A DNA stretch of 11,209 bases from Octopus sinensis (GCF_006345805.1 NW_021827075.1:1-11209), one strand, 5' to 3'; shown: positions 1,389-11,209, numbered from the stretch's first letter. Translations and numbers: made by a program. The notes: generated by a model not told the origin, from the sequence alone.

Positions 1389-1875
1389 CGGGTTACCTTT
1401 GTTTTTTATGTCTTTTTGGATAAAAGTTAATAATATTCACCACAAAAAACAAACATAACGCATTTTGACCCGACATAACGTTTTATCGGTTAACTTGAAT
1501 TTTTTATTTAGAAACAATTTAAAATATTAAAAATTATTTTTTTAATTTCCTTAGCCGACTAAAGGTACTTTTTCAACAATTTCCCCCTCTTCATTTTCTA
1601 AATCTAATGTTCCTCCGTCCTGTTTTATCACTCTTGTATGCAGATGTATCTATCTGGTCATACAGAGGATATTTTCTTGTGTTTTCATTTATATCTTTAT
1701 CCATCCGTAAAAGTGCGTAATCTCCTACTGATATTTTCTCTTCATCAAATCTCTATCTTTCCTTGTTTTTATTTTTCCCCCCGCACTTTCCAAATTGTTA
1801 GGTACGTCTTCTTGCATTTTATTTACTTCTCCGCTTTCTGATACACAAAATCTACTTCTTCGTATTAATTTTCTC

Positions 1876-1902
1876 CTTATCGTAAAATAATTTCATAATT
1901 AC
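1876..1902 (-). other. Possible 27-nt intron (phase 1) in the integrase C-terminal linker
   Basis: GTAATTATGAAATTATTTTACGATAAG contains an in-frame TAA. The flanks are not a conserved motif, so support is weaker. Confidence 0.5.
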
Positions 1903-2111
1903 TAGTAAAAGCCAATGAAGACTGGATAATGTAATCATCTAGTTTTTTTGATATCCCACTCCCATAAAAATTTTAAATGGAATATACTTCGTAGTGTCAC
2001 GTTTAGAATTATTATATTGTAGACAATTCTTTTAATAATTGCATGATATTCTCCAAACATTCCATTTGAAGCGCTTGTAGAAGAGATCCATCGTTTTTAG
2101 ATTGGTTAAAT

Positions 2112-2136
2112 CTTAAAATTAACAAAATAAATATAC
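2112..2136 (-). other. Putative 25-nt spliceosomal intron (phase 2, within the Arg codon of VER)
   Basis: GTATATTTATTTTGTTAATTTTAAG. Removal gives CAA GGT CAG GTA GAA CG|A TTT AAC CAA = QGQVERFNQ; unspliced reading hits TAA. Confidence 0.88.
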
Positions 2137-2377
2137 CGTTCTACCTGACCTTGTATACGTGGGGCACATGATCTTCCACATGTGCTTAGTGCCAAACTTT
2201 GTACACATTTCCTCCATCATATTGTTTTTGACTCCTTTCCATTATCTGTTTGCAAGATCAATGGAACTCCAATCATCATAAAAATGTTTCAATAATAGGC
2301 ACTTTTTCTGTGGCGCATTTGGTTCTCTAAAGTTCTACAACCCCCTATTTTGAAAAAGAGTCAATTAAAACGAGAAT

Positions 2378-2399
2378 TTGGATAAATCGTAATAAATAC
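2378..2399 (-). other. Putative 22-nt intron remnant with decayed 3' splice site (AA instead of AG)
   Basis: GTATTTATTACGATTTATCCAA. Removal gives FKW|ILVLIDSFSK, the usual rve W-x-L-x-x-I-D-x-F-S-K segment. Confidence 0.65.
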
Positions 2400-2525
2400 C
2401 CATTTAAAGCTGTTATTTATTTCTGAATATCTTCTTAAATCGATCAAATCAGCAATGTATCTATCTCTTGGGCCTCTTGCAATAATAGGAGTGATAACCG
2501 ACCTTGTAGGTAGCAATTTTTTGAA

Positions 2526-2552
2526 CTGAAATTGAATAATTTAACTAAATAC
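2526..2552 (-). other. Putative 27-nt spliceosomal intron (phase 0)
   Basis: GTATTTAGTTAAATTATTCAATTTCAG contains an in-frame TAA. Removal joins KCDYCQ to FKKLLPTRSVITPI. Confidence 0.85.
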
Positions 2553-2672
2553 CTGACAATAATCACATTTTTGAATTATTTTGCTAATCTCTTCCCAAGT
2601 TGCACCATATATCTTTCCCTTAAGCATAGAAAACATTTTATCTCCTCCAAAATGTACATAACTGTGCTCACA

Positions 2673-2698
2673 CTAATCATAATTAAATAAATTGATAC
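2673..2698 (-). other. Putative 26-nt spliceosomal intron (phase 0)
   Basis: GTATCAATTTATTTAATTATGATTAG. Removal shifts frame and joins KYIE to CEHSYVHFGGDK, the H-x3-H half of the HHCC finger. Confidence 0.85.
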
Positions 2699-3477
2699 TT
2701 CTATATATTTCAGCTTTAACTCTTGTTCTTCTATGCAGAATAATCTGACTTTTTTATTCCTTTGGTATATGTAGGCTATATTTTTTTCAATAAGTATTCG
2801 GTTAGCAATCCTACGTATGTCCTTTTTGTTAATTTCTTCCTCATCATTTATATTTACATCATTTTCATCTTCAATGTTTCCGCAATTTTCCATTTTTTAT
2901 TGTATCATTTTCTGCATATTCATATGTAAGAAATTCTTCAATATCCAACGGATCAAAAATATCTGTGTATCTTGCTATCTTTGAGAAAAGAATTTTTTTG
3001 CAAAAGAATGTTGTTGGTTGTTTTTCGAGAAATTTTTCATTAAGCAAAAAAGAAAATTTTTTGGACAAATATTGACAAGAAAAATGAGGATTCTCCTCTT
3101 TATAAGATAAAATTTCTATTTTCTGATTAAAATTCAGACGAGTATAATAATTACGAGAAAACATGTGGAACAATTTTTATTAATAAAATTCAAATTTATT
3201 AAAAAAAATTTTGAAAAATAAAAATTATAGTACAAAATTAATATTTTCGATGAGAGGAAAACGAGTTGACACAGGTGACGTCGACGTCGCAAACGAGAGC
3301 GAGTCCCCCCTTGAACGGGAATAGCGTAAACCCATCGGGACTTTTTTCGTCACCACGGTCTAGATTTGATCTTTAGTAATTAATTAAAAATTTAGTTTTA
3401 AAATCATTGAATAAAAATCGAATGTTTTTAAATACATAATTTAAATTTACACGTTTATTTACATTTTTTTGTTGTCA

Positions 3478-3779
3478 ATGGTTATAAACTACGAAACAAA
3501 ATTAAAAATTGCTAAATTAATATTGAAGAACAAATTATCCGAAAGACAGATAATTCAAAAATACAAAACTAGTAAAGGCATAATTTCACTAATAAAAAAA
3601 CAATTGTGACTTTTCTTAACGAATTCGTCGATAATATTTATAACGAAGGTTTAAAAAACGATAACATGAAAACAATTCTAAGAGAAACGCAAGATTCTCT
3701 TGATCAGCTAAAGAAAAAAAATTTCATAAATTTCCCGAACTGCTCAAATTATTTTACGATTTTCGACTTAATTTTATGA
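3478..3779 (+). pseudogene. psq/CENP-B-type HTH fragment, probably a pogo/Tigger-like transposase N-terminus
   Basis: ATG 3478: MVINYETKLKIAKLILKNKLSERQIIQKYKTSKGIISLIKKQL* (TGA 3607-3609). A shifted frame continues FLNEFVDNIYNEGLKNDNMKTILRETQDSL..* (3779). No DDE domain seen. A pogo-type terminus lies downstream at 4141. Confidence 0.5.
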
Positions 3780-4080
3780 AAATTAAAGAAAACACACATC
3801 GTTAATAAACTTCAGTTAGCATATTAAAACCAGTTATTATCAGTTTTGTTTTATTGTTGCGTTTACATTCCTAATTTACATTCCTAATCCAAAGGATCCT
3901 GTTGGCCGTTGTGCGTGGGAACAGCTGTTCCATCCGGCTTGCTGGCCGATTAATTTCTGATTAATTTAACTTTCCTTTTAAAAAAAAAATTTTATGAAAA
4001 ATGTAAGAAGTAAAAGGAAAACTGGGGATAAATTAATTTTTCTAAAATTGATTTTTGATGTTTAAAAATCTGTTTTTATT

Positions 4081-4143
4081 AAACCCCTGTTTTTGGGGCA
4101 CCCCCGTGGGGCACTTGGTGCCCCAATTCGGGGTCGAACTGTA
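4081..4143. repeat. pogo/Tigger-type transposon terminus (right-end TIR) followed by TA
   Basis: Reverse strand reads TA|CAGTTCGACCCCGAATTGGGGCACCAAGTGCCCCA. A CAGT terminus with TA target is typical of pogo/Tc1-mariner. Outer 21 nt are 19/21 identical to 8807-8827. Confidence 0.7.
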
Positions 4144-4239
4144 TAACAAAGATAAAGAGACAACCAAACATGTAATTTTAATTATACAAATTAAAACTCT
4201 TAACAATTGCCATTATTCTTCGTAAATGTGGGAAAAAAT

Positions 4240-4880
4240 GAACGTGATACTCAGTCAATTGGTTTGGAGCAATCAATGAACATGCTCTATCACTGTGCAA
4301 TTGTATATTGGCCTCATTGACTTGGAACCCTGTGAATTTGAAGAAATTGATAAATTAGTCAGAAAGAAACTTATGAACTTGAATGTGCATATGAAACCAG
4401 CATGCAAAGAAAAACTTTACTTAACGAGGAATATGTTTGGAAGAGGACTGATATCAAGCACTTTCAAAGCTGAGAAAATGTTGCTTGATTTCAAAACAAG
4501 TCTGGAAAGGCGAAAATTTACTTCTCTGAGGAGTGCAGGAATTCTGTGGGCTGAACAACAAGGAAAGTCACATATGGCCACAATCACAGAATTCTTGCGA
4601 ATAAAATATGAATCAACCCAGCACATTGAACAGACACTAAAGAGTCTGCAGATTGAGTGTCTCTTATCAGCAAATTAAAAAGAAAACTTTCCATTCAAAA
4701 TTATTTGAATCACTTGATAATGAAACTTTCGATATATAGAAATATTTCACCTAAATCTGAAGCCATTCTCTTCCTTCTGCAAGACAGTAATATTTTCCTC
4801 CGCAAGCTTGGTTCAAAATGTTCACATTGCAAAACTTCTAATAAGACACTCGAAATTTTGGAAACTCGATGCAATAGAAT
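4240..4880 (+). mobile_element. Second R4/Dong-like non-LTR fragment (RT thumb to CCHC knuckle), truncated at both ends
   Basis: FGAINEHALSLCN/YIGLIDLEPCEFEEIDKLVRKKLMNLNVHMKPACKEKLYLTRNMFGRGL..LRSAGIL..FHSKLF..SEAILFLLQDSNIF..KCSHCKTSNKTLEILETRC. Collinear with, but diverged from, positions 1-625. Confidence 0.88.
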
Positions 4881-4907
4881 GCGATCGCCTCCAGGTGTTT
4901 TAAAATA

Positions 4908-5640
4908 TACACCCCTCACCATTAAAATCCGAACACTTAATTTTTAGCAAATTTTTAATCATTTTTAATAAAATAATTTATTTGAGCTTCTTTATTTGTA
5001 TTATTTTAACTATTTATATATTTAAGTATATATTCGACAATATAATTTTCAAAATTAAAGCAGAAACGTGTTTTCTAGTGACAAAGAATTCCGAACGGTA
5101 TTTTGTTCAACTCGAATACAATTTTTATTAGACAGAAATGAATAATTTCAAAAAAGGACAAATTATATCTTTATATAAACAAAATTTCTCCTATAAAATG
5201 ATTTCGGACATCGTAAATATACCGAAGACAACTGTTTGGGACTTTGTTAAAAAATATCTAAAAACTGGGATTACGTGCAGAAAGGCTGGATCTGGAAGAC
5301 CACCCAAGTTCAGTCAAGATGAAATTAGGATTCTTTTATCATTATCAACTGATAATTTCCAAACCGCAGCTACCTTGTCTTCAGAAATGGAAAAAATTAC
5401 ACAAAAAAAGTCTCAGCACGCACAATAACAAGAATTCTAAACTCAAAAGGTTTGTATGGACGAGTTGTAAAGAAACGACCATTTCTAAGTTCAAAAAATA
5501 TTGCTCTCAGATATGGAATATCTAAAAAATTTCATGCAATTTCCGACAGCGGATGGAGGAAAGTTATTTTCTCCGACGAATGTAGTTTTGAACTTTTTTC
5601 CCATTCAAGACCAATATATCAATACAGAAAAAAGGAATCT
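4908..5640 (+). mobile_element. Tc1-like (DD34E family) DNA transposon, left TIR plus 3'-truncated transposase
   Basis: TA (4908-4909) then CACCCCTCACCATTAAAATCCGAACAC (4910-4936, TIR-like). ORF from 5138: paired-like HTH, GSGRPPK linker, one frameshift in an A-run at ~5409 (restores VSARTITRILNSKGLYGRVVKKRPFLS), then WRKVIFSDECSFELF (first catalytic Asp). Breaks off near 5640. No second Asp, Glu or right TIR found. Confidence 0.88.
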
Positions 5641-6234
5641 CCCCGGCGTCGTCAAATTGGGATTTGTGGGATAGAATGGGGTATGGCAATGAGTTTGTGG
5701 GGACCTACGAAGTATGATTGCAAAATGCCACTCTAGCACATGTTTCTCATTGTGTCTATCTCCGAACAACCCGCCGACGCCAACAAGAGTCTCTTAATAA
5801 CCTTCAGTCCATTGATCTGCACATAATTCAACTCGTCAACCTTCTTGATAGATAGAGCATCCATTTCTTTGGGAGATGCCATTTACTCCGCCCCTTGCTA
5901 GAGGAGTGTTTGATTGCATACAACCCACTCAAATGAACAGCCACAAAGAAGGAAAACTTGCCAATTTCCTTGTCAAATTCTGCACTGCAGCCAATTAGTG
6001 TCATTTTCTGGAGATATTGCGGGTCTTCGATTAAAAGGTCGTCATAAACAATTTTATATTGTTGAATAATGTGGGACACACTTTGAGAATGCTGGTCAAG
6101 GGAGAAAGGGTAGAAGCCTTGTGAATTACCGGACTGCTATTTTGATTTCTCCTGTGCTACGTTCTTCGGACAAAATGGTATCCGTTAGTCCATATTTAGT
6201 TTTTGTTTAAATCCAAGAATTTTATGAATTAAAG

Positions 6235-6268
6235 TTAACACATTCTCGAAATTAACACATTCTCGAAA
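6235..6268. repeat. Perfect 17-bp tandem duplication
   Basis: TTAACACATTCTCGAAA at 6235-6251 and 6252-6268. Confidence 0.9.
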
Positions 6269-6294
6269 TTGGCCATGAAATTTGTATGTAAAAA

Positions 6295-6455
6295 AAGAAG
6301 ATTAAAGGAACAAAATCGAAAAATATCACAAAAATTATAAATAAGAAATAAATAAAAAAGGAGATTAATAGAAAATAATCGAAAAATATCACAAACAGTA
6401 TAAATAAGTAAAAAAGGAGATAAAAGGAATAAAATCGAAAAATATCACAAAAATG
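6295..6455. repeat. Degenerate A-rich minisatellite, about 3 units of 56-63 bp
   Basis: Core AATCGAAAAATATCACAAA at 6314, 6377 and 6433. The 6252..6467 minus ORF is a low-complexity artefact of it. Confidence 0.8.
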
Positions 6456-6721
6456 ATGAACTTTCAAATAATTAAATCATTAAAAGAAAATACATCCCGA
6501 ATTATTCCTTCTGAATCCAATTATAAAAAAATTAAAGTGTAGCAAATAATTAAAAGAGCACCACAAAGTAAATCAACAGCGTGCTCACACGTGCATAATT
6601 TATTAGGCATTAGGTTTGCCATTAAGAAATTAAGATAAAAAACTAACAATTTTTCAAGTTTTTTTTAATTGAATTAAAATATTATTATACAACTATAAAT
6701 AATTTTTAATTTTAAATAATG

Positions 6722-6932
6722 AGTGGGATAATCGGCCCGAAAGCCCTGGAGTTCCTTTCAGAAATCGGTTTGATGATCTCGAGGAAAAGTCACGAGAGAC
6801 GTGAGTCTAGCTGGCTTTTTCAGCGCATTTCGCTCGCGATATTGCGCGGAAACTGTCTATCTATTCGCGCGTCCTCTTAATCAAAGAATTAGCATCATAA
6901 ATTCACTTAATTAACACTCAAACTAAAAAAAA
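6722..6932 (+). mobile_element. 5'-truncated CRE-like non-LTR retrotransposon 3' end (RLE C-terminus)
   Basis: Open frame 6722-6880: SGIIGPKALEFLSEIGLMISRKSHERRESSWLFQRISLAILRGNCLSIRASS*. QRIS.AI.RGN is the characteristic CRE-type RLE terminus. GC/CpG-rich, followed by a short UTR and an A-run at ~6925-6932. Confidence 0.8.
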
Positions 6933-7026
6933 ATTTTTTTAAAAATTTAAATATTAAAAATCTCGCGTCACCTAAAACAAAGAATCTTATAATATAAAAT
7001 CAGAGGTTTCGCTAAGCGTTTTATTC

Positions 7027-7206
7027 TAGGCTTCTGGAGTCAGTGATACAGAATTTTTCACTGTTTTTTGTTTGGTGCTGATGGAGAATATGTTTGGAGA
7101 TAAACGTGAAGTCTTAAAACTCATCTATCGAAAAGCGATGGACAGGTTGGGATTTGACTCAGAAAAACTCAACCAATTGAAAGATTTGGCAGCTGAACTT
7201 CTTTAG
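7027..7206 (+). pseudogene. Short unassigned protein-like frame (helical C-terminal remnant?)
   Basis: ..ASGVSDTEFFTVFCLVLMENMFGDKREVLKLIYRKAMDRLGFDSEKLNQLKDLAAELL*. Coding-like composition between AT-rich flanks. Family not recognised. Confidence 0.3.
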
Positions 7207-8687
7207 AATTTTGTTGCTTATTGATTTTTTGGGTTTCTCAATAAATTTTTTTGGCAATGTTTCTAGGAATAAAATTTTTTAAAGTTTGCTTTTTTTACTT
7301 AACCTTAAAACCAAGAAATATTTGTTAAGTAATTTTTTCTATTATTCTTAAATTGTCTTTTTTGCGTGGTTTTTAGAACCTATGCTTACTGAACAATCGA
7401 CCGACTTCAAAAACAGGAAAGTGTGTTTTTACATTACCATGTCACAATTTCTTGCAATACAGAGGACATGTTGGCTGGTTTGAGAAAAGATCCATTTTCA
7501 ATGCAATGATGGTGAAAGTAATGCTGGCAAACACTCCAAGCTAATCAAAATATAAAAATTAAAGACCGATAGGACACTGGTCACCGGGAAATAAACATTT
7601 TAAGCAACATGATTCAAAAGACATGCGACATATACTACAACAGTCGTCTTCGATGTTCCAGCGTCTGAGAATCAAGCACGAAACCAAGAAAGTCACCGAC
7701 GGGTTTTCAACCAATCAGTTGCCTAGCCGTATAATCAAATAAATAGTTATTCTTAATATCCATTAAGCCACATTTTAAACAACTGTAAAAAGCTACGAGG
7801 TATGAAAGAATTAGACTCTAAGGGCACCGAGCCGATTAAATACGTGCTGTGCGTTCTGCGGATGACAATTACTACTTGGAAATGAAGACTTGTTTATACC
7901 AATTTCTTATTGAAAACCTAAACAAGAAGTGTCCGTATCTCACGTGGATTGGGTTGTCGAATTCGTTTCGCATCACCAACTTAATAGTTTGGTAAATTTA
8001 TTCAGTTGCTCATAGACAACCCCAAATCAACAAGTTTTATGAGATGGGGATTTTGTATCAACGGTATAATTATTTATTAAACTGGCCCAACCCAGATGCC
8101 CTCCAATGAACACTTGTTCGCCTCTAAATGACATGCAACACACAGCAGGGAGAAATGGCTTGAATTGGATGCCACTCCTTCTCTGTATGTACCCACATGA
8201 CACCCGTAAATATAAGAATTCCATTAGTTCTGTGATACACGCCGTATTGTATAAAAGATGTTTGTCTCCTTCCGAAAGACAACTTTGGACTGAATGTTTG
8301 TTGATCAATTGAGTGTGTCGAACTCCGAGAAGATTCAATCCAGCAATCCTCACTGAATAAATGTCAGGACTGGAACCCCGAAGACTGAGGGAACAGTTTA
8401 ATATCCTTTAGATTTGTTTGCCGAATGATTTGTAGTTTCCTAAACGGTTTGCTGTCACCTTTCATTCTATTTTGATTAATAATAATCCCCGTGCAGGATC
8501 AGAGTTCTAGAAGTCCTTTTTTTCGGTAGGCATTAAGTGCCTCCTGAGCGTTTCCATATCCGATTGGGAGTTCCAACTGATATGGTGGACCCCATAACGC
8601 CACGATAATACCGGAATGAAAATAAGAAATCCCTATTTTTCAACTGTGTCGTGCCAGAAGTACTCATTGCCTCGCGGGCAGGGGAAC

Positions 8688-8829
8688 TTTTCCCCGGTAG
8701 GGGGTTTATTTCATTAAAAATCATCGTATTTTATAGGGATGGCAAAAATATTTCCCCAAAAGCAAGGTTTTCCCCAAAAAAGAGGGTTTCCCCGCTACTT
8801 GGTTTTCCCCAATTCGAGGTCGCACTGTA
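8688..8829. repeat. Second pogo/Tigger-type terminus with subterminal TTTCCCC repeats, followed by TA
   Basis: Reverse strand TA|CAGTGCGACCTCGAATTGGGGAAAACCAAGTAG. TTTCCCC occurs five times (~8689, 8751, 8769, 8787, 8804). Confidence 0.7.
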
Positions 8830-8962
8830 TTTGTGATTCATAATGAAACACAACTTTCATTTAAAGCAAATCTAATTATAGAGAAATTTTTGCTTTAGGG
8901 CACTAAATAAATTTTTCAAGAAAATAATAAAATTTAACTAATTTCTTTTTTGACTCTCAGGG

Positions 8963-9330
8963 ACAACTAATTCATTTGATTATGATTTGGGATGGAGTCG
9001 TCATGAAGTTCTCCGAAAATTATATCGATAACTTATCTATTGAAGAAGCAAAGAGGACGCACATCCAATCAGTTACGCTGAAAATGACTCATAAGAGTAT
9101 GCTAATTGAGCAAAAATTGGATGAAGGTATCTGATAAAGAGTATGATTCTATTTCTGATCGGTTTGTTGAGATATCATGTACTGGTAGAGACGACCCAAT
9201 GATTTCTGAAGAAGACACATTGATAAAATAAGATGTGATGCTTTTGAGTAAAAGGCAATGTGAGATAAGCTCTTCTTCTAAAAAAGAGAGTGGATACTAA
9301 CGATTTGGAGTGCAGGTACACTTAATCAGA
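8963..9330 (+). mobile_element. Third R4/Dong-like fragment: 5'-truncated 3' end paralogous to ~984-1350
   Basis: TATGATTTGGGATGGAGTCGTC vs TATGACATGGGATGGAGTTGTC; ATCCAATC, GATGAAGGTATCTG, ACGACCCAATGA, CTCTTCTTC and GAGAGTGGATA anchors are shared in the same order. Contains stops and indels. Confidence 0.85.
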
Positions 9331-9399
9331 TTTAAAAATATTTTTCTAAAAATAAAGAATACTTTAAAAAATTAGTTATTCTGGCTTTAATATAGAAGG

Positions 9400-9480
9400 T
9401 TCAAGCATTGATGTTGACCCTCCAAACATTAGTGTTGACGCTTCAAGCATTAGGTTAAAGCTTCAAAAATTAGCGTTTTT
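9400..9480. repeat. Degenerate 21-bp tandem repeat, about 4 units
   Basis: TTCAAGCATTGATGTTGACCC / TCCAAACATTAGTGTTGACGC / TTCAAGCATTAGGTTAAAGC / TTCAAAAATTAGCG.. Confidence 0.75.
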
Positions 9481-9569
9481 TAGGAAATCAAAACATTTTT
9501 ACTAAATCAAAGTAGCTATTTATTAGTTGTTACTTTCTTCTCGGCAAGGGAAATATATCTGAACATTCT

Positions 9570-9755
9570 AAGTTAAAAAGATTCATGATTATTAGGGCAA
9601 TTTAAGTTAAAAAAGTTAAAATATATGAAAATGTGTATTTTGGCTTAAAAGTAAAAATAAAGTATTTTTTAAATGAAATAGTTACTTATTAAAGAAAAAA
9701 ATAAAGTTAAAAAGTTAAAAAAAATTTTTTTATAAAGTTAAAAATTTTAACTTTA
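9570..9755. repeat. Cluster of AAGTTAAAA motifs upstream of the CGGBP1-like ORF; possible subterminal repeats or promoter
   Basis: AAGTTAAAA at about 9570, 9604, 9613, 9704, 9712 and 9735, with an inverted TTTTAACTT at ~9744. TAGGGCAA at 9593 resembles a hAT-type 5' end, but no partner was found. Confidence 0.45.
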
Positions 9756-9781
9756 TTTAAAATAGCGCGTGGGTGTTTAGT

Positions 9782-10199
9782 ATGCCAAGAACTGCAAAAA
9801 CAATGTATTTTAAGGCAAAAAAAATTGTTATTGAATATCCGCTGGAGTTTTTATTACGAGAGAATGGCGAGTTGCAATGTCAACTTTGCTTATGCACAGT
9901 CAGGTGTGAGAAAAAGCATTTTGTGAATTCTCACCGAGAATCGAAGAAGCACTCAAATTTATTAAGTTTTTACAAATTAATATAATTTTTAGAGAATAAT
10001 TTCTATCAGCCTTGTTTGGACGAGTTACCCAATGATGACTGGTCAATGCAAGTCACTAAAGCATTTATTCAATGCGATATACCCTTGCATAAATTGACTA
10101 TGCCTCCTCTAAAGAATTTATTCAAGAATACTTCTTTGCCTCTTCCTTCCCAATACAAAGCAAGAATGTGCGTTAAACAATTGAAAACTGAATATATTG
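9782..10199 (+). pseudogene. CGGBP1-like (hAT-related) transposase N-terminus with C2H2/BED-type zinc finger; 3'-truncated, one micro-intron
   Basis: MPRTAKTMYFKAKKIVIEYPLEFLLRENGELQCQLCLCTVRCEKKHFVNSHRESKKHSNLL|KNNFYQPCLDELPNDDWSMQVTKAFIQCDIPLHKLTMPPLKNLFKNTSLPLPSQYKARMCVKQL. The CxxC..H..S.KH and AF...DIPL.KL...L..LF.....LPS motifs match the CGGBP1 family. No DDE core present. Confidence 0.8.
9966..9992 (+). other. Putative 27-nt spliceosomal intron (phase 1)
   Basis: GTTTTTACAAATTAATATAATTTTTAG contains the only in-frame stop (TAA 9983-9985). Removal fuses ORF-track entries 9773..9985 and 10016..10303 in one frame (LL-K-NNFYQP). Confidence 0.75.
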
Positions 10200-10496
10200 T
10201 ATTATGTCGCGTCCCATGGTGGTTACGCATCCCATGCTGGCTACATGTCACCTGTCAATCAATCATTTTTACGAGGTCATTGGCTGTCAGATGTCATAAT
10301 TAATGTGGTTTAATCATTCGTTACTCGTGTGGGCATATTTAATATTTTTAGCGTTATTATTTAATTTTCAACATGTCCTCTTTAAAATGTTTTCCCCTGT
10401 ATATGTAATAATAGGTTTTGTAAAAAATATCTCAGAATATCACATACTATAGTCAATATTTTAAATGGCCAAGACAAATACAATATAAATTAACTA

Positions 10497-10791
10497 TTCC
10501 TTCCTCGGGACCGCTACAGATTCACCCCTGTTGCGGCTGAGTCATCAGGAGCTGTTGGCCCAGCGACTGCCGAGTTCTTGCGCGAACTCGGAAGAATGCT
10601 CGCCACAAAGAAAAATGATCCTCGTGAAGGAGTATGGCTAAGACAAAGGATCGGAATAGCCATACTCCGAGGGAACTCGCTTTCCATACAGGCAGCGGGC
10701 TTCCTCAATTGATTTCTCAAATCAATCTCAAATCAATCTCTTCTCTGAATTTATTAACTGACATTATTAATAATGAAAATATTGAAAAAAA
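10497..10791 (+). mobile_element. Young 5'-truncated CRE-like non-LTR insertion with A-tail and 15-bp TSD
   Basis: Open frame 10497-10712: FLPRDRYRFTPVAAESSGAVGPATAEFLRELGRMLATKKNDPREGVWLRQRIGIAILRGNSLSIQAAGFLN*. 3' UTR with TCTCAAATCAA x2, A-run from 10785. AATATAAATTAACTA flanks it at 10482-10496 and 10792-10806. Confidence 0.9.
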
Positions 10792-10814
10792 AATATAAAT
10801 TAACTAAAAAATCC

Positions 10815-11209
10815 ACTAAATTTATTGTCATTGAGCCTCAATCACAAGTAATGACACATTATTTATCTGTTTCAGGGTATCGTGGAAAGATTTAATCAAA
10901 CTTTAACACGAAATCTTTCAAAGCTGATGAGTGAAGAATCAACTAAAAACTGGATCCAATTTATTAAACGAAGCACTTTTACATATAACACGACTATTCA
11001 TTCTTCTATAAATGAAACACCATTTAAAAACTAAGAGGAGTTTCTGGTATAAACACCGTCATTCATGATGATAAAAGTTTTTTTAATTTTTTTAATTTCA
11101 AAGAAAGTGAATGTTCGGATGATTTTTATCATGTATCATCAAAGGATATGGATGTAGAAAATATTTTAGATGTTTCAGGTAAATTTAATAAATTTTTATT
11201 GTTGAAACG
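10815..11209 (+). pseudogene. Second Ginger/KRBA2-like rve integrase fragment (catalytic Glu region and C-terminal linker); runs off the right edge
   Basis: EPQSQ|GIVERFNQTLTRNLSKLMSEESTKNWIQFIKRSTFTYNTTIHSSINETPFK, then a frameshift, then RGVSGINTVIHDD. Matches the PQSxGxVERxNxT / YN...HS....TPF pattern of rve integrases. Confidence 0.85.
10848..10875 (+). other. Putative 28-nt spliceosomal intron (phase 0)
   Basis: GTAATGACACATTATTTATCTGTTTCAG. Removal gives CCT CAA TCA CAA|GGT ATC GTG GAA AGA TTT AAT CAA = PQSQGIVERFNQ. Confidence 0.88.

What the first reader, a model, noticed from the sequence alone, without database searches (positions are those of the whole stretch)
2112..10875. Two integrase paralogues carry different introns 14 nt apart in the same catalytic motif: candidate independent intron gains in transposons
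Seen in sequence: copy 1 has an uninterrupted CAA GGT (Q-G) but a phase-2 intron inside the Arg codon of VER (2136-2112). Copy 2 has an uninterrupted GAA AGA TTT but a phase-0 intron between Q and G (10875-10848). The sites are 14 coding nt apart, differ in phase, and the intron sequences share no obvious similarity. Inference: reciprocal presence/absence in a highly conserved motif is best explained by separate gains (or gain plus loss), not shared ancestry. If the host is microsporidian, a lineage known mainly for intron loss, this would indicate active micro-intron creation.
Basis: partly seen in the sequence, partly recalled or inferred. Interest (0 to 1): 0.8.

Follow-up and report, generated by a model that had tools for sequence, protein, structure and literature searches.

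The report
Tiny introns in dead dicyemid transposons
Two decayed transposon integrase genes each carry a 25-28-base intron at a different spot in the same catalytic motif, but the DNA most likely comes from a dicyemid (an octopus kidney parasite in which such tiny introns are normal), so this is a modest case of lineage-specific intron gain rather than a surprise in a microsporidian.

Summary
On the minus strand, 2136..2112 is a 25-nt GT..AG segment splitting the Arg codon of QGQVE|R. On the plus strand, 10848..10875 is a 28-nt GT..AG segment between PQSQ and GIVER. Removing each restores the frame and the conserved glutamate motif. The sites lie 14 coding nt apart, in phases 2 and 0, and the two segments show no similarity.

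The interpretation needs revising.
- The host is very probably a dicyemid, not a microsporidian. The window shares transposon families with contigs filed under Octopus sinensis. Those contigs carry housekeeping genes with seven introns of 23-29 nt, which matches the published dicyemid median of 27 bp.
- The two "paralogues" are deeply diverged lineages, identical at only 18 of 74 aligned residues.
- Both copies are dead. Copy 1 has about five frameshifts and several stops. Copy 2 is truncated at its 5' end and frameshifted.

Every relative examined lacks both segments. This includes a nearly intact copy from the same kind of genome and a Pseudoloma element. Independent gain is therefore the most parsimonious reading, but it rests on single dead copies and splicing is untested. 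Tiny introns are the host norm, so interest is moderate.

The parts
1587..3173 (-). Copy 1: pseudogene of a standalone integrase/transposase. It has an HHCC zinc-binding domain, a DDE core and a C-terminal GD-type domain. It contains three GT..AG mini-introns, about five 1-nt frameshifts (near 2897, 2280, 2228, 2177 and 2064) and in-frame stops (TGA 2363..2361, TAA near 2032, TAG near 1941).
   Evidence: Three-frame reading and lesion coordinates. Pfam gives Integrase_H2C2 and rve below the curated cut-off on fragments. Homologues reach E=5e-38 and carry PF00665 and PF17921. Nucleotide alignment to the Pseudoloma element.
2112..2136 (-). Copy 1 mini-intron 3 (the finding): 25 nt, GTATAT...TTAAG, phase 2, inside the Arg codon of QGQVE-R-FNQ, the motif holding the catalytic Glu.
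   Evidence: It appears as a gap of about this length at this site against the Pseudoloma element, whose IQGQV*RFNQS runs uninterrupted.
2526..2552 (-). Copy 1 mini-intron 2: 27 nt, GTATTT...TTCAG, phase 0, after CDYCQ of the zinc-binding domain. It contains an in-frame stop.
2673..2698 (-). Copy 1 mini-intron 1: 26 nt, GTATCA...ATTAG, phase 0, between KLKYIE and CEHSYVHFGGD. A 26-nt GT..AG segment sits at the same site in the diverged L004 copy.
10773..11209 (+). Copy 2: 5'-truncated integrase fragment. It begins about 24 codons before the Glu motif, has a 1-nt frameshift in the A-run at 11020-11038, and runs off the window end.
   Evidence: Pfam rve_3 scores 23.6 bits, below the cut-off. It aligns with the L005 integrase at 35% over 51 aa and with the family in A1.
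10848..10875 (+). Copy 2 mini-intron (the finding): 28 nt, GTAATG...TTCAG, phase 0, between PQSQ and GIVERFNQ.
10464..10712 (+). 3' end of a non-LTR retrotransposon with a restriction-like endonuclease domain (C-terminus ...QRIGIAILRGN). It sits about 60 nt upstream of copy 2, where the 5' part of copy 2 is missing.
   Evidence: tblastx hits to several copies in L004 and L005. Reading of the longer copies. The endonuclease assignment rests on motifs read by eye; Pfam found nothing.
3205..3369 (-). Fragment of the same retrotransposon family (...DRGDEKSPDGFTLFPF...), directly upstream of copy 1.
9782..10205 (+). hAT/CGGBP1-like gene fragment with a further 27-nt GT..AG mini-intron at 9966-9992. 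The paralogue in L004 has none. This shows the feature is not specific to integrases.
   Evidence: The L004 paralogue has a weak, sub-threshold DUF659 match.
4249..4881 (+). Tail of a non-LTR reverse-transcriptase ORF. This is the sequence that ties the window to contig VCDQ01005567.1 (L004), at 87.6% nt and 90% aa identity.

Best explanation
The window is a nest of dead transposons from a dicyemid genome. It may come from a dicyemid assembly or from dicyemid contigs sitting inside an octopus assembly.

The two features are remnants of two deeply diverged lineages of standalone integrase-type transposase genes (zinc-binding HHCC domain plus DDE core). These are Ginger-like elements whose nearest named relatives are in Microsporidia.

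While the lineages were active in a host with minimal splice signals (GTa...AG) and normal introns of 20-30 nt, each acquired its own host-type ultrashort spliceosomal introns. Copy 1's lineage gained three (26, 27 and 25 nt). Copy 2's lineage gained at least one (28 nt). Two of these landed 14 nt apart in the catalytic-glutamate motif, by separate insertions rather than common descent. Both copies later decayed.

Shown:
- the sequence anatomy;
- the absence of the segments from all relatives found;
- tiny introns in host genes on linked contigs;
- conservation of copy 1's first intron in a diverged copy.

Inferred:
- that the segments were spliced in the active ancestors;
- that they arose by gain rather than differential loss;
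- that the window itself is dicyemid DNA.
For: Anatomy:
- Both segments have GT..AG ends and are 25 and 28 nt long. Removing them restores the frame and the PQxQGxVERFNQ motif.
- Three further segments of the same kind occur in the window.
- All five have length 3n+1 or 3n+2, or else contain an in-frame stop.

Host:
- Window ORF 4295-4675 is 90% identical to XP_029655886.1. Its contig, L004, matches the window at 87.6% nt over 669 nt.
- L004 shares repeats at 86-98% identity with L005 and L006.
- The window shares at least six transposon protein families with these loci.
- L005 carries an HSDL2-like gene with introns of 24, 26, 26 and 23 nt. The spliced product aligns continuously with PDB 3KVO at E=3e-51.
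- L006 carries a NIT1-like gene with introns of 29, 25 and 26 nt. The spliced product aligns with 1EMS at E=1e-75.
- Published data: the dicyemid median intron is 27 bp and two thirds are under 30 bp (PMC6543705). D. japonicum lives in O. sinensis and its genome is 49% repeats (PMC6736024). Among animals, only myxobolids and Dicyema have introns under 30 bp, and in Dicyema the splice signals are reduced to 'GTa' and 'AG' (PMC13644364). Both motif introns start with GTA.

Gain:
- The Pseudoloma element that groups with copy 1 (52-74% bootstrap) has none of copy 1's three segments.
- The nearly intact L005 integrase reads PQSQGQIERYNQTLK without interruption.
- All nine database homologues aligned are continuous proteins.
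- Copy 1, copy 2 and the L005 copy do not form a clade.

Indirect evidence of splicing:
- Copy 1's first intron is kept at the same site, at the same 26-nt length but with diverged sequence, in the L004 copy. That copy is 47% identical over 40 aa.
- An unspliced 26-nt insert would have broken the transposase frame while the family was diversifying.
Against: - There are no RNA data, so splicing is not shown for any of these segments.
- Each of the two motif introns is seen in a single dead copy. It could in principle have arisen after the copy died.
- The tree is poorly resolved. Deep nodes have 2-47% bootstrap and copy 2 contributes only about 75 aligned residues, so differential loss cannot be excluded formally.
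- The window carries no host gene. Its dicyemid origin rests on shared transposon families, and transposons can move between genomes.
- The linked contigs are filed as Octopus sinensis.
- Their GC content is 33-34.5%, a little below the 36.7% reported for D. japonicum.
- Several frameshifts lie in homopolymer runs and could be assembly errors. The in-frame stops cannot be explained that way.
Confidence: 0.68

Rival explanations
1. Both introns, and perhaps more, were present in a common ancestral element. The lineages differ because of differential loss rather than independent gain.
For: The deep branching of the integrase tree is unresolved. Transposons are sometimes thought to lose introns through reverse-transcribed copies (my own knowledge, not tested here). 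Copy 1's first intron is shared by two diverged copies, so some introns in the family are old.
Against: None of the 12 relatives aligned has either intron. These include a copy from the same kind of genome (L005) and the closest relative of copy 1 (Pseudoloma). Loss would be needed on many branches, against two gains. The two introns lie 14 nt apart, and a 14-nt exon between two ancestral introns is implausible.
Confidence: 0.12
2. The segments are not introns. They are small random insertions that accumulated in dead pseudogenes and happen to have GT..AG ends.
For: Both copies are clearly dead and carry other lesions. Each motif segment is seen only once.
Against: GT..AG ends are expected at about 0.0023 per segment, yet five of five interruptions in the window show them, plus the L004 one. 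Lengths of 25-28 nt match the 23-29 nt of seven host introns. The other frame-breaking lesions I located are 1-nt indels. One such segment is positionally conserved between diverged copies.
Confidence: 0.08
3. The window is genuine octopus DNA. The integrase elements reached the octopus by horizontal transfer from its dicyemid parasite, and the mini-introns are relics that the octopus cannot splice.
For: The closest database matches are filed as Octopus sinensis. Dicyemids live in the octopus renal sac (PMC6736024). The transposon families involved have relatives scattered across unrelated parasites, which suggests they are mobile between genomes.
Against: Two of the linked contigs carry housekeeping genes with 23-29-nt introns and an intronless, divergent Kv channel. 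The contigs themselves therefore look like dicyemid DNA rather than octopus DNA with inserts. L004 shares 86-98% identical repeats with them.
Confidence: 0.08
4. One reading: the host is a microsporidian, and these are newly created micro-introns in a lineage otherwise known for losing introns.
For: The nearest named relatives of the integrase (Enteropsectra, Pseudoloma) and of the retrotransposon (Hamiltosporidium, Dictyocoela) are microsporidian. Microsporidian introns can be this short (PMC13644364, introduction).
Against: The linked contigs encode a T1-domain Kv channel and HSDL2-like and NitFhit-like genes, with 3-4 introns per kb. That is a metazoan, intron-rich pattern. Best identity to any microsporidian element is only 29-38%. 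The Pseudoloma relative lacks the segments.
Confidence: 0.02

Closest known systems
Ginger1/Ginger2 DNA transposons (cut-and-paste elements whose transposase is a retroviral-type integrase; from my own knowledge of the Repbase literature, not read here)
   Same: The gene is standalone and encodes an HHCC zinc-binding domain, a DDE (rve) core and a C-terminal domain. There is no reverse transcriptase upstream. A relative on a Logan contig (L003) has inverted repeats of about 55 nt near both ends.
   Different: No terminal inverted repeats or target-site duplications were found around copy 1 or the L005 copy. No Ginger reference was compared. The nearest named relatives are unclassified microsporidian proteins.
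Ultrashort spliceosomal introns of dicyemids (PMC6543705, PMC6736024, PMC13644364)
   Same: GT..AG ends, 24-28 nt, a 5' signal of roughly 'GTa', a 3' signal of little more than AG, and no clear polypyrimidine tract. Seven host-gene introns of 23-29 nt on the linked contigs have the same form.
   Different: These sit in transposon genes rather than host genes. They are more AT-rich than the host-gene ones (11-29% GC against 24-54%). Copy 1 has 3 in about 1.4 kb, against a published host average of 6.2 per 1.16 kb. Splicing is untested.
Standalone integrase genes of Microsporidia (Enteropsectra breve ENBRE01_2067; Pseudoloma neurophilia M153_71300001146)
   Same: The domain order and N-terminal region are the same, at 29-38% identity. 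Short stretches of the Pseudoloma element are nearly identical to copy 1 at nucleotide level, for example the PRDRYIADLIDL codons.
   Different: The microsporidian genes are uninterrupted at all three of copy 1's intron sites and at copy 2's site.
Introners (transposons that become introns)
   Same: Both link transposons with intron gain.
   Different: Here the intron lies inside a transposon's own gene. The 25-28-nt segments are not repeated elsewhere in the window and show no similarity to each other.

Membership tests
Retroviral-type integrase (Pfam rve PF00665 + Integrase_H2C2 PF17921) | HHCC zinc-binding motif followed by a D, D, E catalytic core | tested here: met
   Copy 1, after removing the three segments, reads H-x4-H...C-x2-C, ADLIDL, QTDNGKE and QGQVER. 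Copy 2 keeps only the Glu motif and what follows it. The same-genome relative in L005 passes both Pfam cut-offs: rve 53.5 bits against 32.6, and H2C2 28.0 against 25.5.
Retroviral-type integrase (Pfam rve PF00665 + Integrase_H2C2 PF17921) | Score above Pfam's curated cut-off for the window copies themselves | tested here: not met
   Fragments of copy 1 score H2C2 22.4 bits (cut-off 25.5) and rve 19.0 (cut-off 32.6). Copy 2 scores rve_3 23.6 (cut-off 26.5). Membership of the window copies rests instead on homologues found at E=5e-38 that carry both domains.
Ginger DNA transposons | Terminal inverted repeats and target-site duplications flanking the integrase gene | tested here: inconclusive
   No convincing inverted repeats flank copy 1 or the L005 copy. 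The copies are decayed or nested. A distant relative, L003, does have inverted repeats of about 55 nt near its ends.
Ginger DNA transposons | No reverse transcriptase or RNase H in the same element (distinguishes it from an LTR retrotransposon pol) | tested here: met
   The proteins start with Met about 100 aa before the zinc-binding domain in L005, L004 and the database homologues. No RT ORF was seen on reading the frames upstream of copy 1. LTR-like direct repeats were not found either.
Dicyemid-type ultrashort spliceosomal introns | GT..AG ends, length about 20-30 nt, 5' signal 'GTa' | tested here: met
   The segments are 25 nt (GTATAT..AAG) and 28 nt (GTAATG..CAG). Host genes on the linked contigs have 23-29-nt GT..AG introns. 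Published values are in PMC6543705 and PMC13644364.
Dicyemid-type ultrashort spliceosomal introns | Removal restores the reading frame and the conserved protein alignment | tested here: met
Dicyemid-type ultrashort spliceosomal introns | Removed from the transcript by the spliceosome | not testable with these tools
   No RNA data were available. The only indirect support is positional conservation of copy 1's first intron in L004.
Dicyemid-type ultrashort spliceosomal introns | The host genome is a dicyemid | tested here: inconclusive
   The evidence is strong but indirect: shared transposon families with contigs that carry tiny-intron metazoan genes and are filed under the dicyemid's octopus host. 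No dicyemid reference sequence was available for comparison.
   The linked contigs carry a Kv channel with a T1 domain and HSDL2-like and NitFhit-like genes with 3-4 introns each.

The most novel reading that the evidence does not exclude
Dicyemid genomes may create ultrashort introns readily because their splice signals are minimal (GTa...AG, 20-30 nt). Any short insertion with those ends would be spliced out, and so rescued rather than lethal. Their transposon families would then record recent, datable, lineage-specific intron gains. Five transposon intron sites are seen here: four lineage-specific and one shared. That would make dicyemid transposons a natural system for studying how introns are born.
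Probability: 0.3. Interest if true: 0.6.

Novelty: new member of a known kind. Interest (0 to 1): 0.35.

Why it matters
If the segments were spliced, they show that transposon genes living in an ultrashort-intron animal acquire host-style introns lineage by lineage. Transposon families have many datable copies, so this would give a tractable way to time intron gains and look for their mechanism. That is useful, but it is not a break with what is known. Transposase genes with introns are common, and 25-28-nt introns are the norm in dicyemids.

A practical by-product may matter more to database users. Three contigs of the Octopus sinensis assembly GCA_006345805.1 appear to be dicyemid DNA, and so do RefSeq proteins named as octopus that sit on them.

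Tried and rejected
- **Ciliate host, with the segments as excised germline sequences.** Rejected. The deletion boundary of 2136..2112 can slide by only 1 nt and cannot be bounded by TA (read from the sequence). Long reading frames use the standard code with no in-frame TAA or TAG.
- **Microsporidian host.** Rejected (see rival explanations).
- **Octopus host.** I held this view after because L004 shares repeats with contigs carrying a Kv channel gene whose model spans 3.8 kb. I dropped it when the Kv coding region proved to be a single exon and the neighbouring HSDL2-like and NIT1-like genes showed 23-29-nt introns.
- **More copies of either lineage.**
  - A homology search with copy 2 found nothing, as did one with the hAT-like protein.
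  - Ten window ORFs are not in the protein collection.
  - tblastn of the L005 integrase against all held loci found no further copies.
  - The remaining retrotransposon hits I looked up by name (10 of them) belong to microsporidia, Babesia or unnamed metagenome and read-assembly contigs, not to further octopus-filed contigs.
- **Terminal inverted repeats around the integrase genes.** None found.
- **A structural link between the integrase genes and the retrotransposon 3' ends that flank them.** No shared flank sequence was found. The adjacency may be chance, given how dense that family is.
- **Origin of the two introns by tandem duplication of an AG|GT exon segment.** The intron ends do not repeat the adjacent exon sequence (inspection of the sequence).
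- **Rfam and tRNA scans of the window.** Nothing found.

Full report
**1. The observation**

The window is AT-rich (27-39% GC across 1-kb windows, 33% overall) and has no tRNA or Rfam match.

On the minus strand, 2136..2112 reads GTATATTTATTTTGTTAATTTTAAG (25 nt). It sits between ...CAA GGT CAG GTA GAA CG and A TTT AAC CAA.

On the plus strand, 10848..10875 reads GTAATGACACATTATTTATCTGTTTCAG (28 nt). It sits between ...CCT CAA TCA CAA and GGT ATC GTG GAA AGA TTT AAT CAA.

Removing them gives IQGQVERFNQ and PQSQGIVERFNQ. From established knowledge of the rve family, this is the motif carrying the catalytic glutamate of DDE integrases. It is the best-conserved block in the alignment of 13 family members.

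78% of shuffles score as well or better.

**2. What the two genes are**

*Copy 1* runs on the minus strand from about 3173 to 1587.
- It encodes an N-terminal region, an HHCC zinc-binding domain, a DDE core and a C-terminal ...VGDYALL... domain.
- Pfam recognises Integrase_H2C2 and rve only below cut-off on its fragments.
- A database search finds 11 homologues up to E=5e-38 and 36% identity. Most carry PF00665, alone or with PF17921. The named ones are from the microsporidia Enteropsectra breve and Pseudoloma neurophilia.
- These homologues are standalone proteins of 330-480 aa that start with Met about 100 aa before the zinc-binding domain. The gene is therefore not a fragment of a retrotransposon pol. 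I saw no RT frame upstream when reading the translations.
- Copy 1 is dead. It has 1-nt frameshifts near 2897, 2280, 2228, 2177 and 2064, and in-frame stops at 2363..2361, near 2032, near 1941 and further downstream.
- It also has two more interruptions of the same kind as the finding. One is 26 nt at 2698..2673 (KLKYIE|CEHSYVHFGGD). The other is 27 nt at 2552..2526 (CDYCQ|FKK), which contains an in-frame stop.

*Copy 2* begins only about 24 codons before the motif, at about 10773.
- It lies about 60 nt downstream of the stop codon (10712) of an unrelated retrotransposon 3' end.
- It has a frameshift in an A-run at 11020-11038.
- It runs off the window.

The two copies share 18 of 74 aligned residues. 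In neighbour-joining trees they do not group together.
- Copy 1 groups with the Pseudoloma element at 52-74% bootstrap.
- Copy 2 is unplaced.
- A third copy, from L005, falls elsewhere.

They are different lineages of one superfamily, not recent paralogues.

**3. Whose genome this is**

Ten window ORFs are absent from the protein collection.

An exhaustive search with ORF 4295-4675, the tail of a non-LTR reverse-transcriptase ORF, found one protein at 90% identity. It is XP_029655886.1, named Octopus sinensis. Two more proteins with that name scored 48-50%.

The contig of the 90% hit (L004) matches window 4249-4881 at 87.6% nt. L004 shares repeats at 86-98% identity with the other two contigs, L005 and L006. 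Translated comparison shows at least six transposon protein families shared between the window and these loci.

I first took this to mean an octopus host. Introns of 25 nt would then be very odd.

L005, however, carries an HSDL2-like dehydrogenase gene whose frame is restored by removing four GT..AG segments of 24, 26, 26 and 23 nt. The product aligns without a break to human HSDL2 (PDB 3KVO, E=3e-51).

L006 carries a NIT1-like gene with GT..AG segments of 29, 25 and 26 nt. Its product aligns without a break to 1EMS (E=1e-75).

The Kv channel next to the HSDL2-like gene has a single-exon coding region and is highly divergent.

The literature explains the pattern.
- Among animals, introns under 30 bp are known only from myxobolid myxozoans and Dicyema. 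In Dicyema the splice signals are reduced to 'GTa' and 'AG' (PMC13644364).
- The dicyemid median intron is 27 bp (PMC6543705).
- D. japonicum lives in the renal sac of O. sinensis, has a 67.5-Mb genome that is 49% repeats, and averages 6.2 introns per gene (PMC6736024).

The simplest reading is that these 'octopus' contigs are dicyemid DNA and that the window is too. This is an inference: the window carries no host gene, and no dicyemid reference could be searched.

**4. Are the segments introns?**

They have the form of the host's introns. There are six clear transposon-borne cases: five in the window and one in L004. A seventh possible case is an in-frame 24-nt segment after ...KSPF in the L005 integrase.
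- All seven have GT..AG ends.
- They are 24-28 nt long.
- Five of the seven start with GTA.

The seven host-gene introns are 23-29 nt.

GT..AG ends are expected by chance at about 0.0023 per segment. The other frame-breaking lesions I located in the same copies are 1-nt indels.

The nucleotide alignment of copy 1 with the Pseudoloma element shows the second and third segments as gaps of about their length. The first falls in a poorly aligned stretch, but the continuous Pseudoloma reading frame shows no interruption there either.

One piece of indirect evidence supports function. An internally deleted member of copy 1's lineage in L004 is 47% identical over the first 40 aa. It has a 26-nt GT..AG segment at exactly the site of copy 1's first intron (KLKFIE|VQHNLNHFGRD), with diverged sequence. 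A frame-breaking insert would not have persisted through the diversification of an active family unless it was removed from the transcript.

For the two motif introns there is no such evidence, because each is seen only once.

**5. Gain or loss?**

No relative has an interruption at either motif site. This holds for:
- the nine database proteins aligned;
- the Pseudoloma pseudogene, which reads IQGQV*RFNQS;
- the nearly intact integrase in L005, which has one stop and reads PQSQGQIERYNQTLK.

The L005 gene also lacks copy 1's other two introns.

The hAT-like gene in the window has a 27-nt intron that its L004 paralogue lacks.

The transposon genes are also poorer in introns than host genes: copy 1 has 3 in about 1.4 kb against a published host average of 6.2 per 1.16 kb.

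The pattern fits sporadic, lineage-specific gain after the elements entered this genome. Two ancestral introns 14 nt apart would imply a 14-nt exon, which also argues against shared ancestry.

The tree is too weak to exclude differential loss formally. I found no sign of how the segments arose: their ends do not repeat adjacent exon sequence, and they are not repeated elsewhere in the window.

**6. Comparison with what is known, and verdict**

The genes work like Ginger-type transposases, but membership is untested. I found no terminal repeats around the window copies. A distant relative does have them.

The segments match dicyemid ultrashort introns in every feature that sequence alone can show.

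The microsporidian premise does not, and it supplied most of the claimed interest. The proximity of the two sites is about a 7% coincidence by my estimate.

I rate this a new member of known kinds, of moderate interest. A useful side result is that part of a public octopus assembly appears to be parasite DNA.

Noticed in passing
L005 6718-7738 (+); L006 about 21971-21000 (-); L004 whole: Contigs VCDQ01001009.1, VCDQ01009621.1 and VCDQ01005567.1 of the Octopus sinensis assembly GCA_006345805.1 carry (or, for the third, share repeats with contigs that carry) housekeeping genes with 23-29-nt introns. They look like dicyemid DNA. RefSeq proteins XP_029655886.1, XP_029655345.1 and XP_029654503.1, named as octopus, sit on them. 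A search of the paper library found no report of this.
   Followed up: partly
window 10464-10712 (+), 6719-6880 (+), 3205-3369 (-); L005 12500-12790 (+), 15290-14900 (-), 8547-8720 (+), 9417-9036 (-): 3' ends of a non-LTR retrotransposon are very dense, at about 10 in 52 kb. Read by eye, the family has a CCHC motif, a PD..D..ExK nuclease-like domain and a C-terminus ...QRISLAIxRGN. Pfam found nothing. In L005 two copies flank the integrase gene and face inward. A second inward-facing pair encloses only about 315 nt. No shared flank sequence was found, so target preference versus chance remains open.
   Followed up: partly
window 9966-9992 (+), within the hAT/CGGBP1-like gene 9782-10205; L004 1140-1960: A 27-nt GT..AG segment containing an in-frame stop interrupts the hAT-like ORF in the window. 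The L004 paralogue is uninterrupted at that site. This is another lineage-specific transposon mini-intron.
   Followed up: partly
(database relatives of window 4295-4675 and of copy 1): For both the retrotransposon and the integrase, the named relatives outside the octopus-filed contigs all belong to unrelated parasites: Hamiltosporidium, Dictyocoela, Enteropsectra, Pseudoloma and Babesia caballi. A stretch of copy 1 is nearly identical at nucleotide level to the Pseudoloma element (34 of 36 nt at PRDRYIADLIDL by my count from the alignment). This may indicate a transposon pool exchanged among parasites.
   Followed up: no
L005 13123-14340 (+): A nearly intact integrase gene with a single TGA stop. 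It passes the Pfam cut-offs for rve and H2C2. After ...KSPF it has a possible in-frame 24-nt GT..AG segment, GTTAGTCTCTTTTTATTTACTCAG. Removing it gives the family-typical SPFxLFYG spacing.
   Followed up: partly
L005 3920-5092 (+): A single-exon Kv channel with a T1 domain. It keeps the TTVGYGD selectivity filter, but the segment where S4 should be (read by eye) has almost none of the usual basic residues. In the neighbouring HSDL2-like protein, the position of the catalytic Tyr in the YxxxK motif reads Phe (FALTK) in the alignment to 3KVO.
   Followed up: no
window 4121-4144 and 8807-8830: Two copies of the same GC-rich element end, CCCCAATTCG(G/A)GGTCG(A/C)ACTGTAT (92% identical). One lies just before the retrotransposon tail at 4249-4881. 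The other lies about 120 nt before the tail's continuation at about 8949-9320. This suggests a nested insertion that splits one retrotransposon copy.
   Followed up: no
window 6291-6471: Three copies of an A-rich unit of about 62 nt (81-100% identical), spaced 56-63 nt apart, in a region with no recognisable coding sequence.
   Followed up: no
window 5138-5740 (+): The N-terminal half of a Tc1/mariner transposase (HTH_Tnp_Tc3_2 above the Pfam cut-off). It has a frameshift in a 7-A run near 5405 and is truncated near 5740. A relative lies in L004 at 17090-19157.
   Followed up: no
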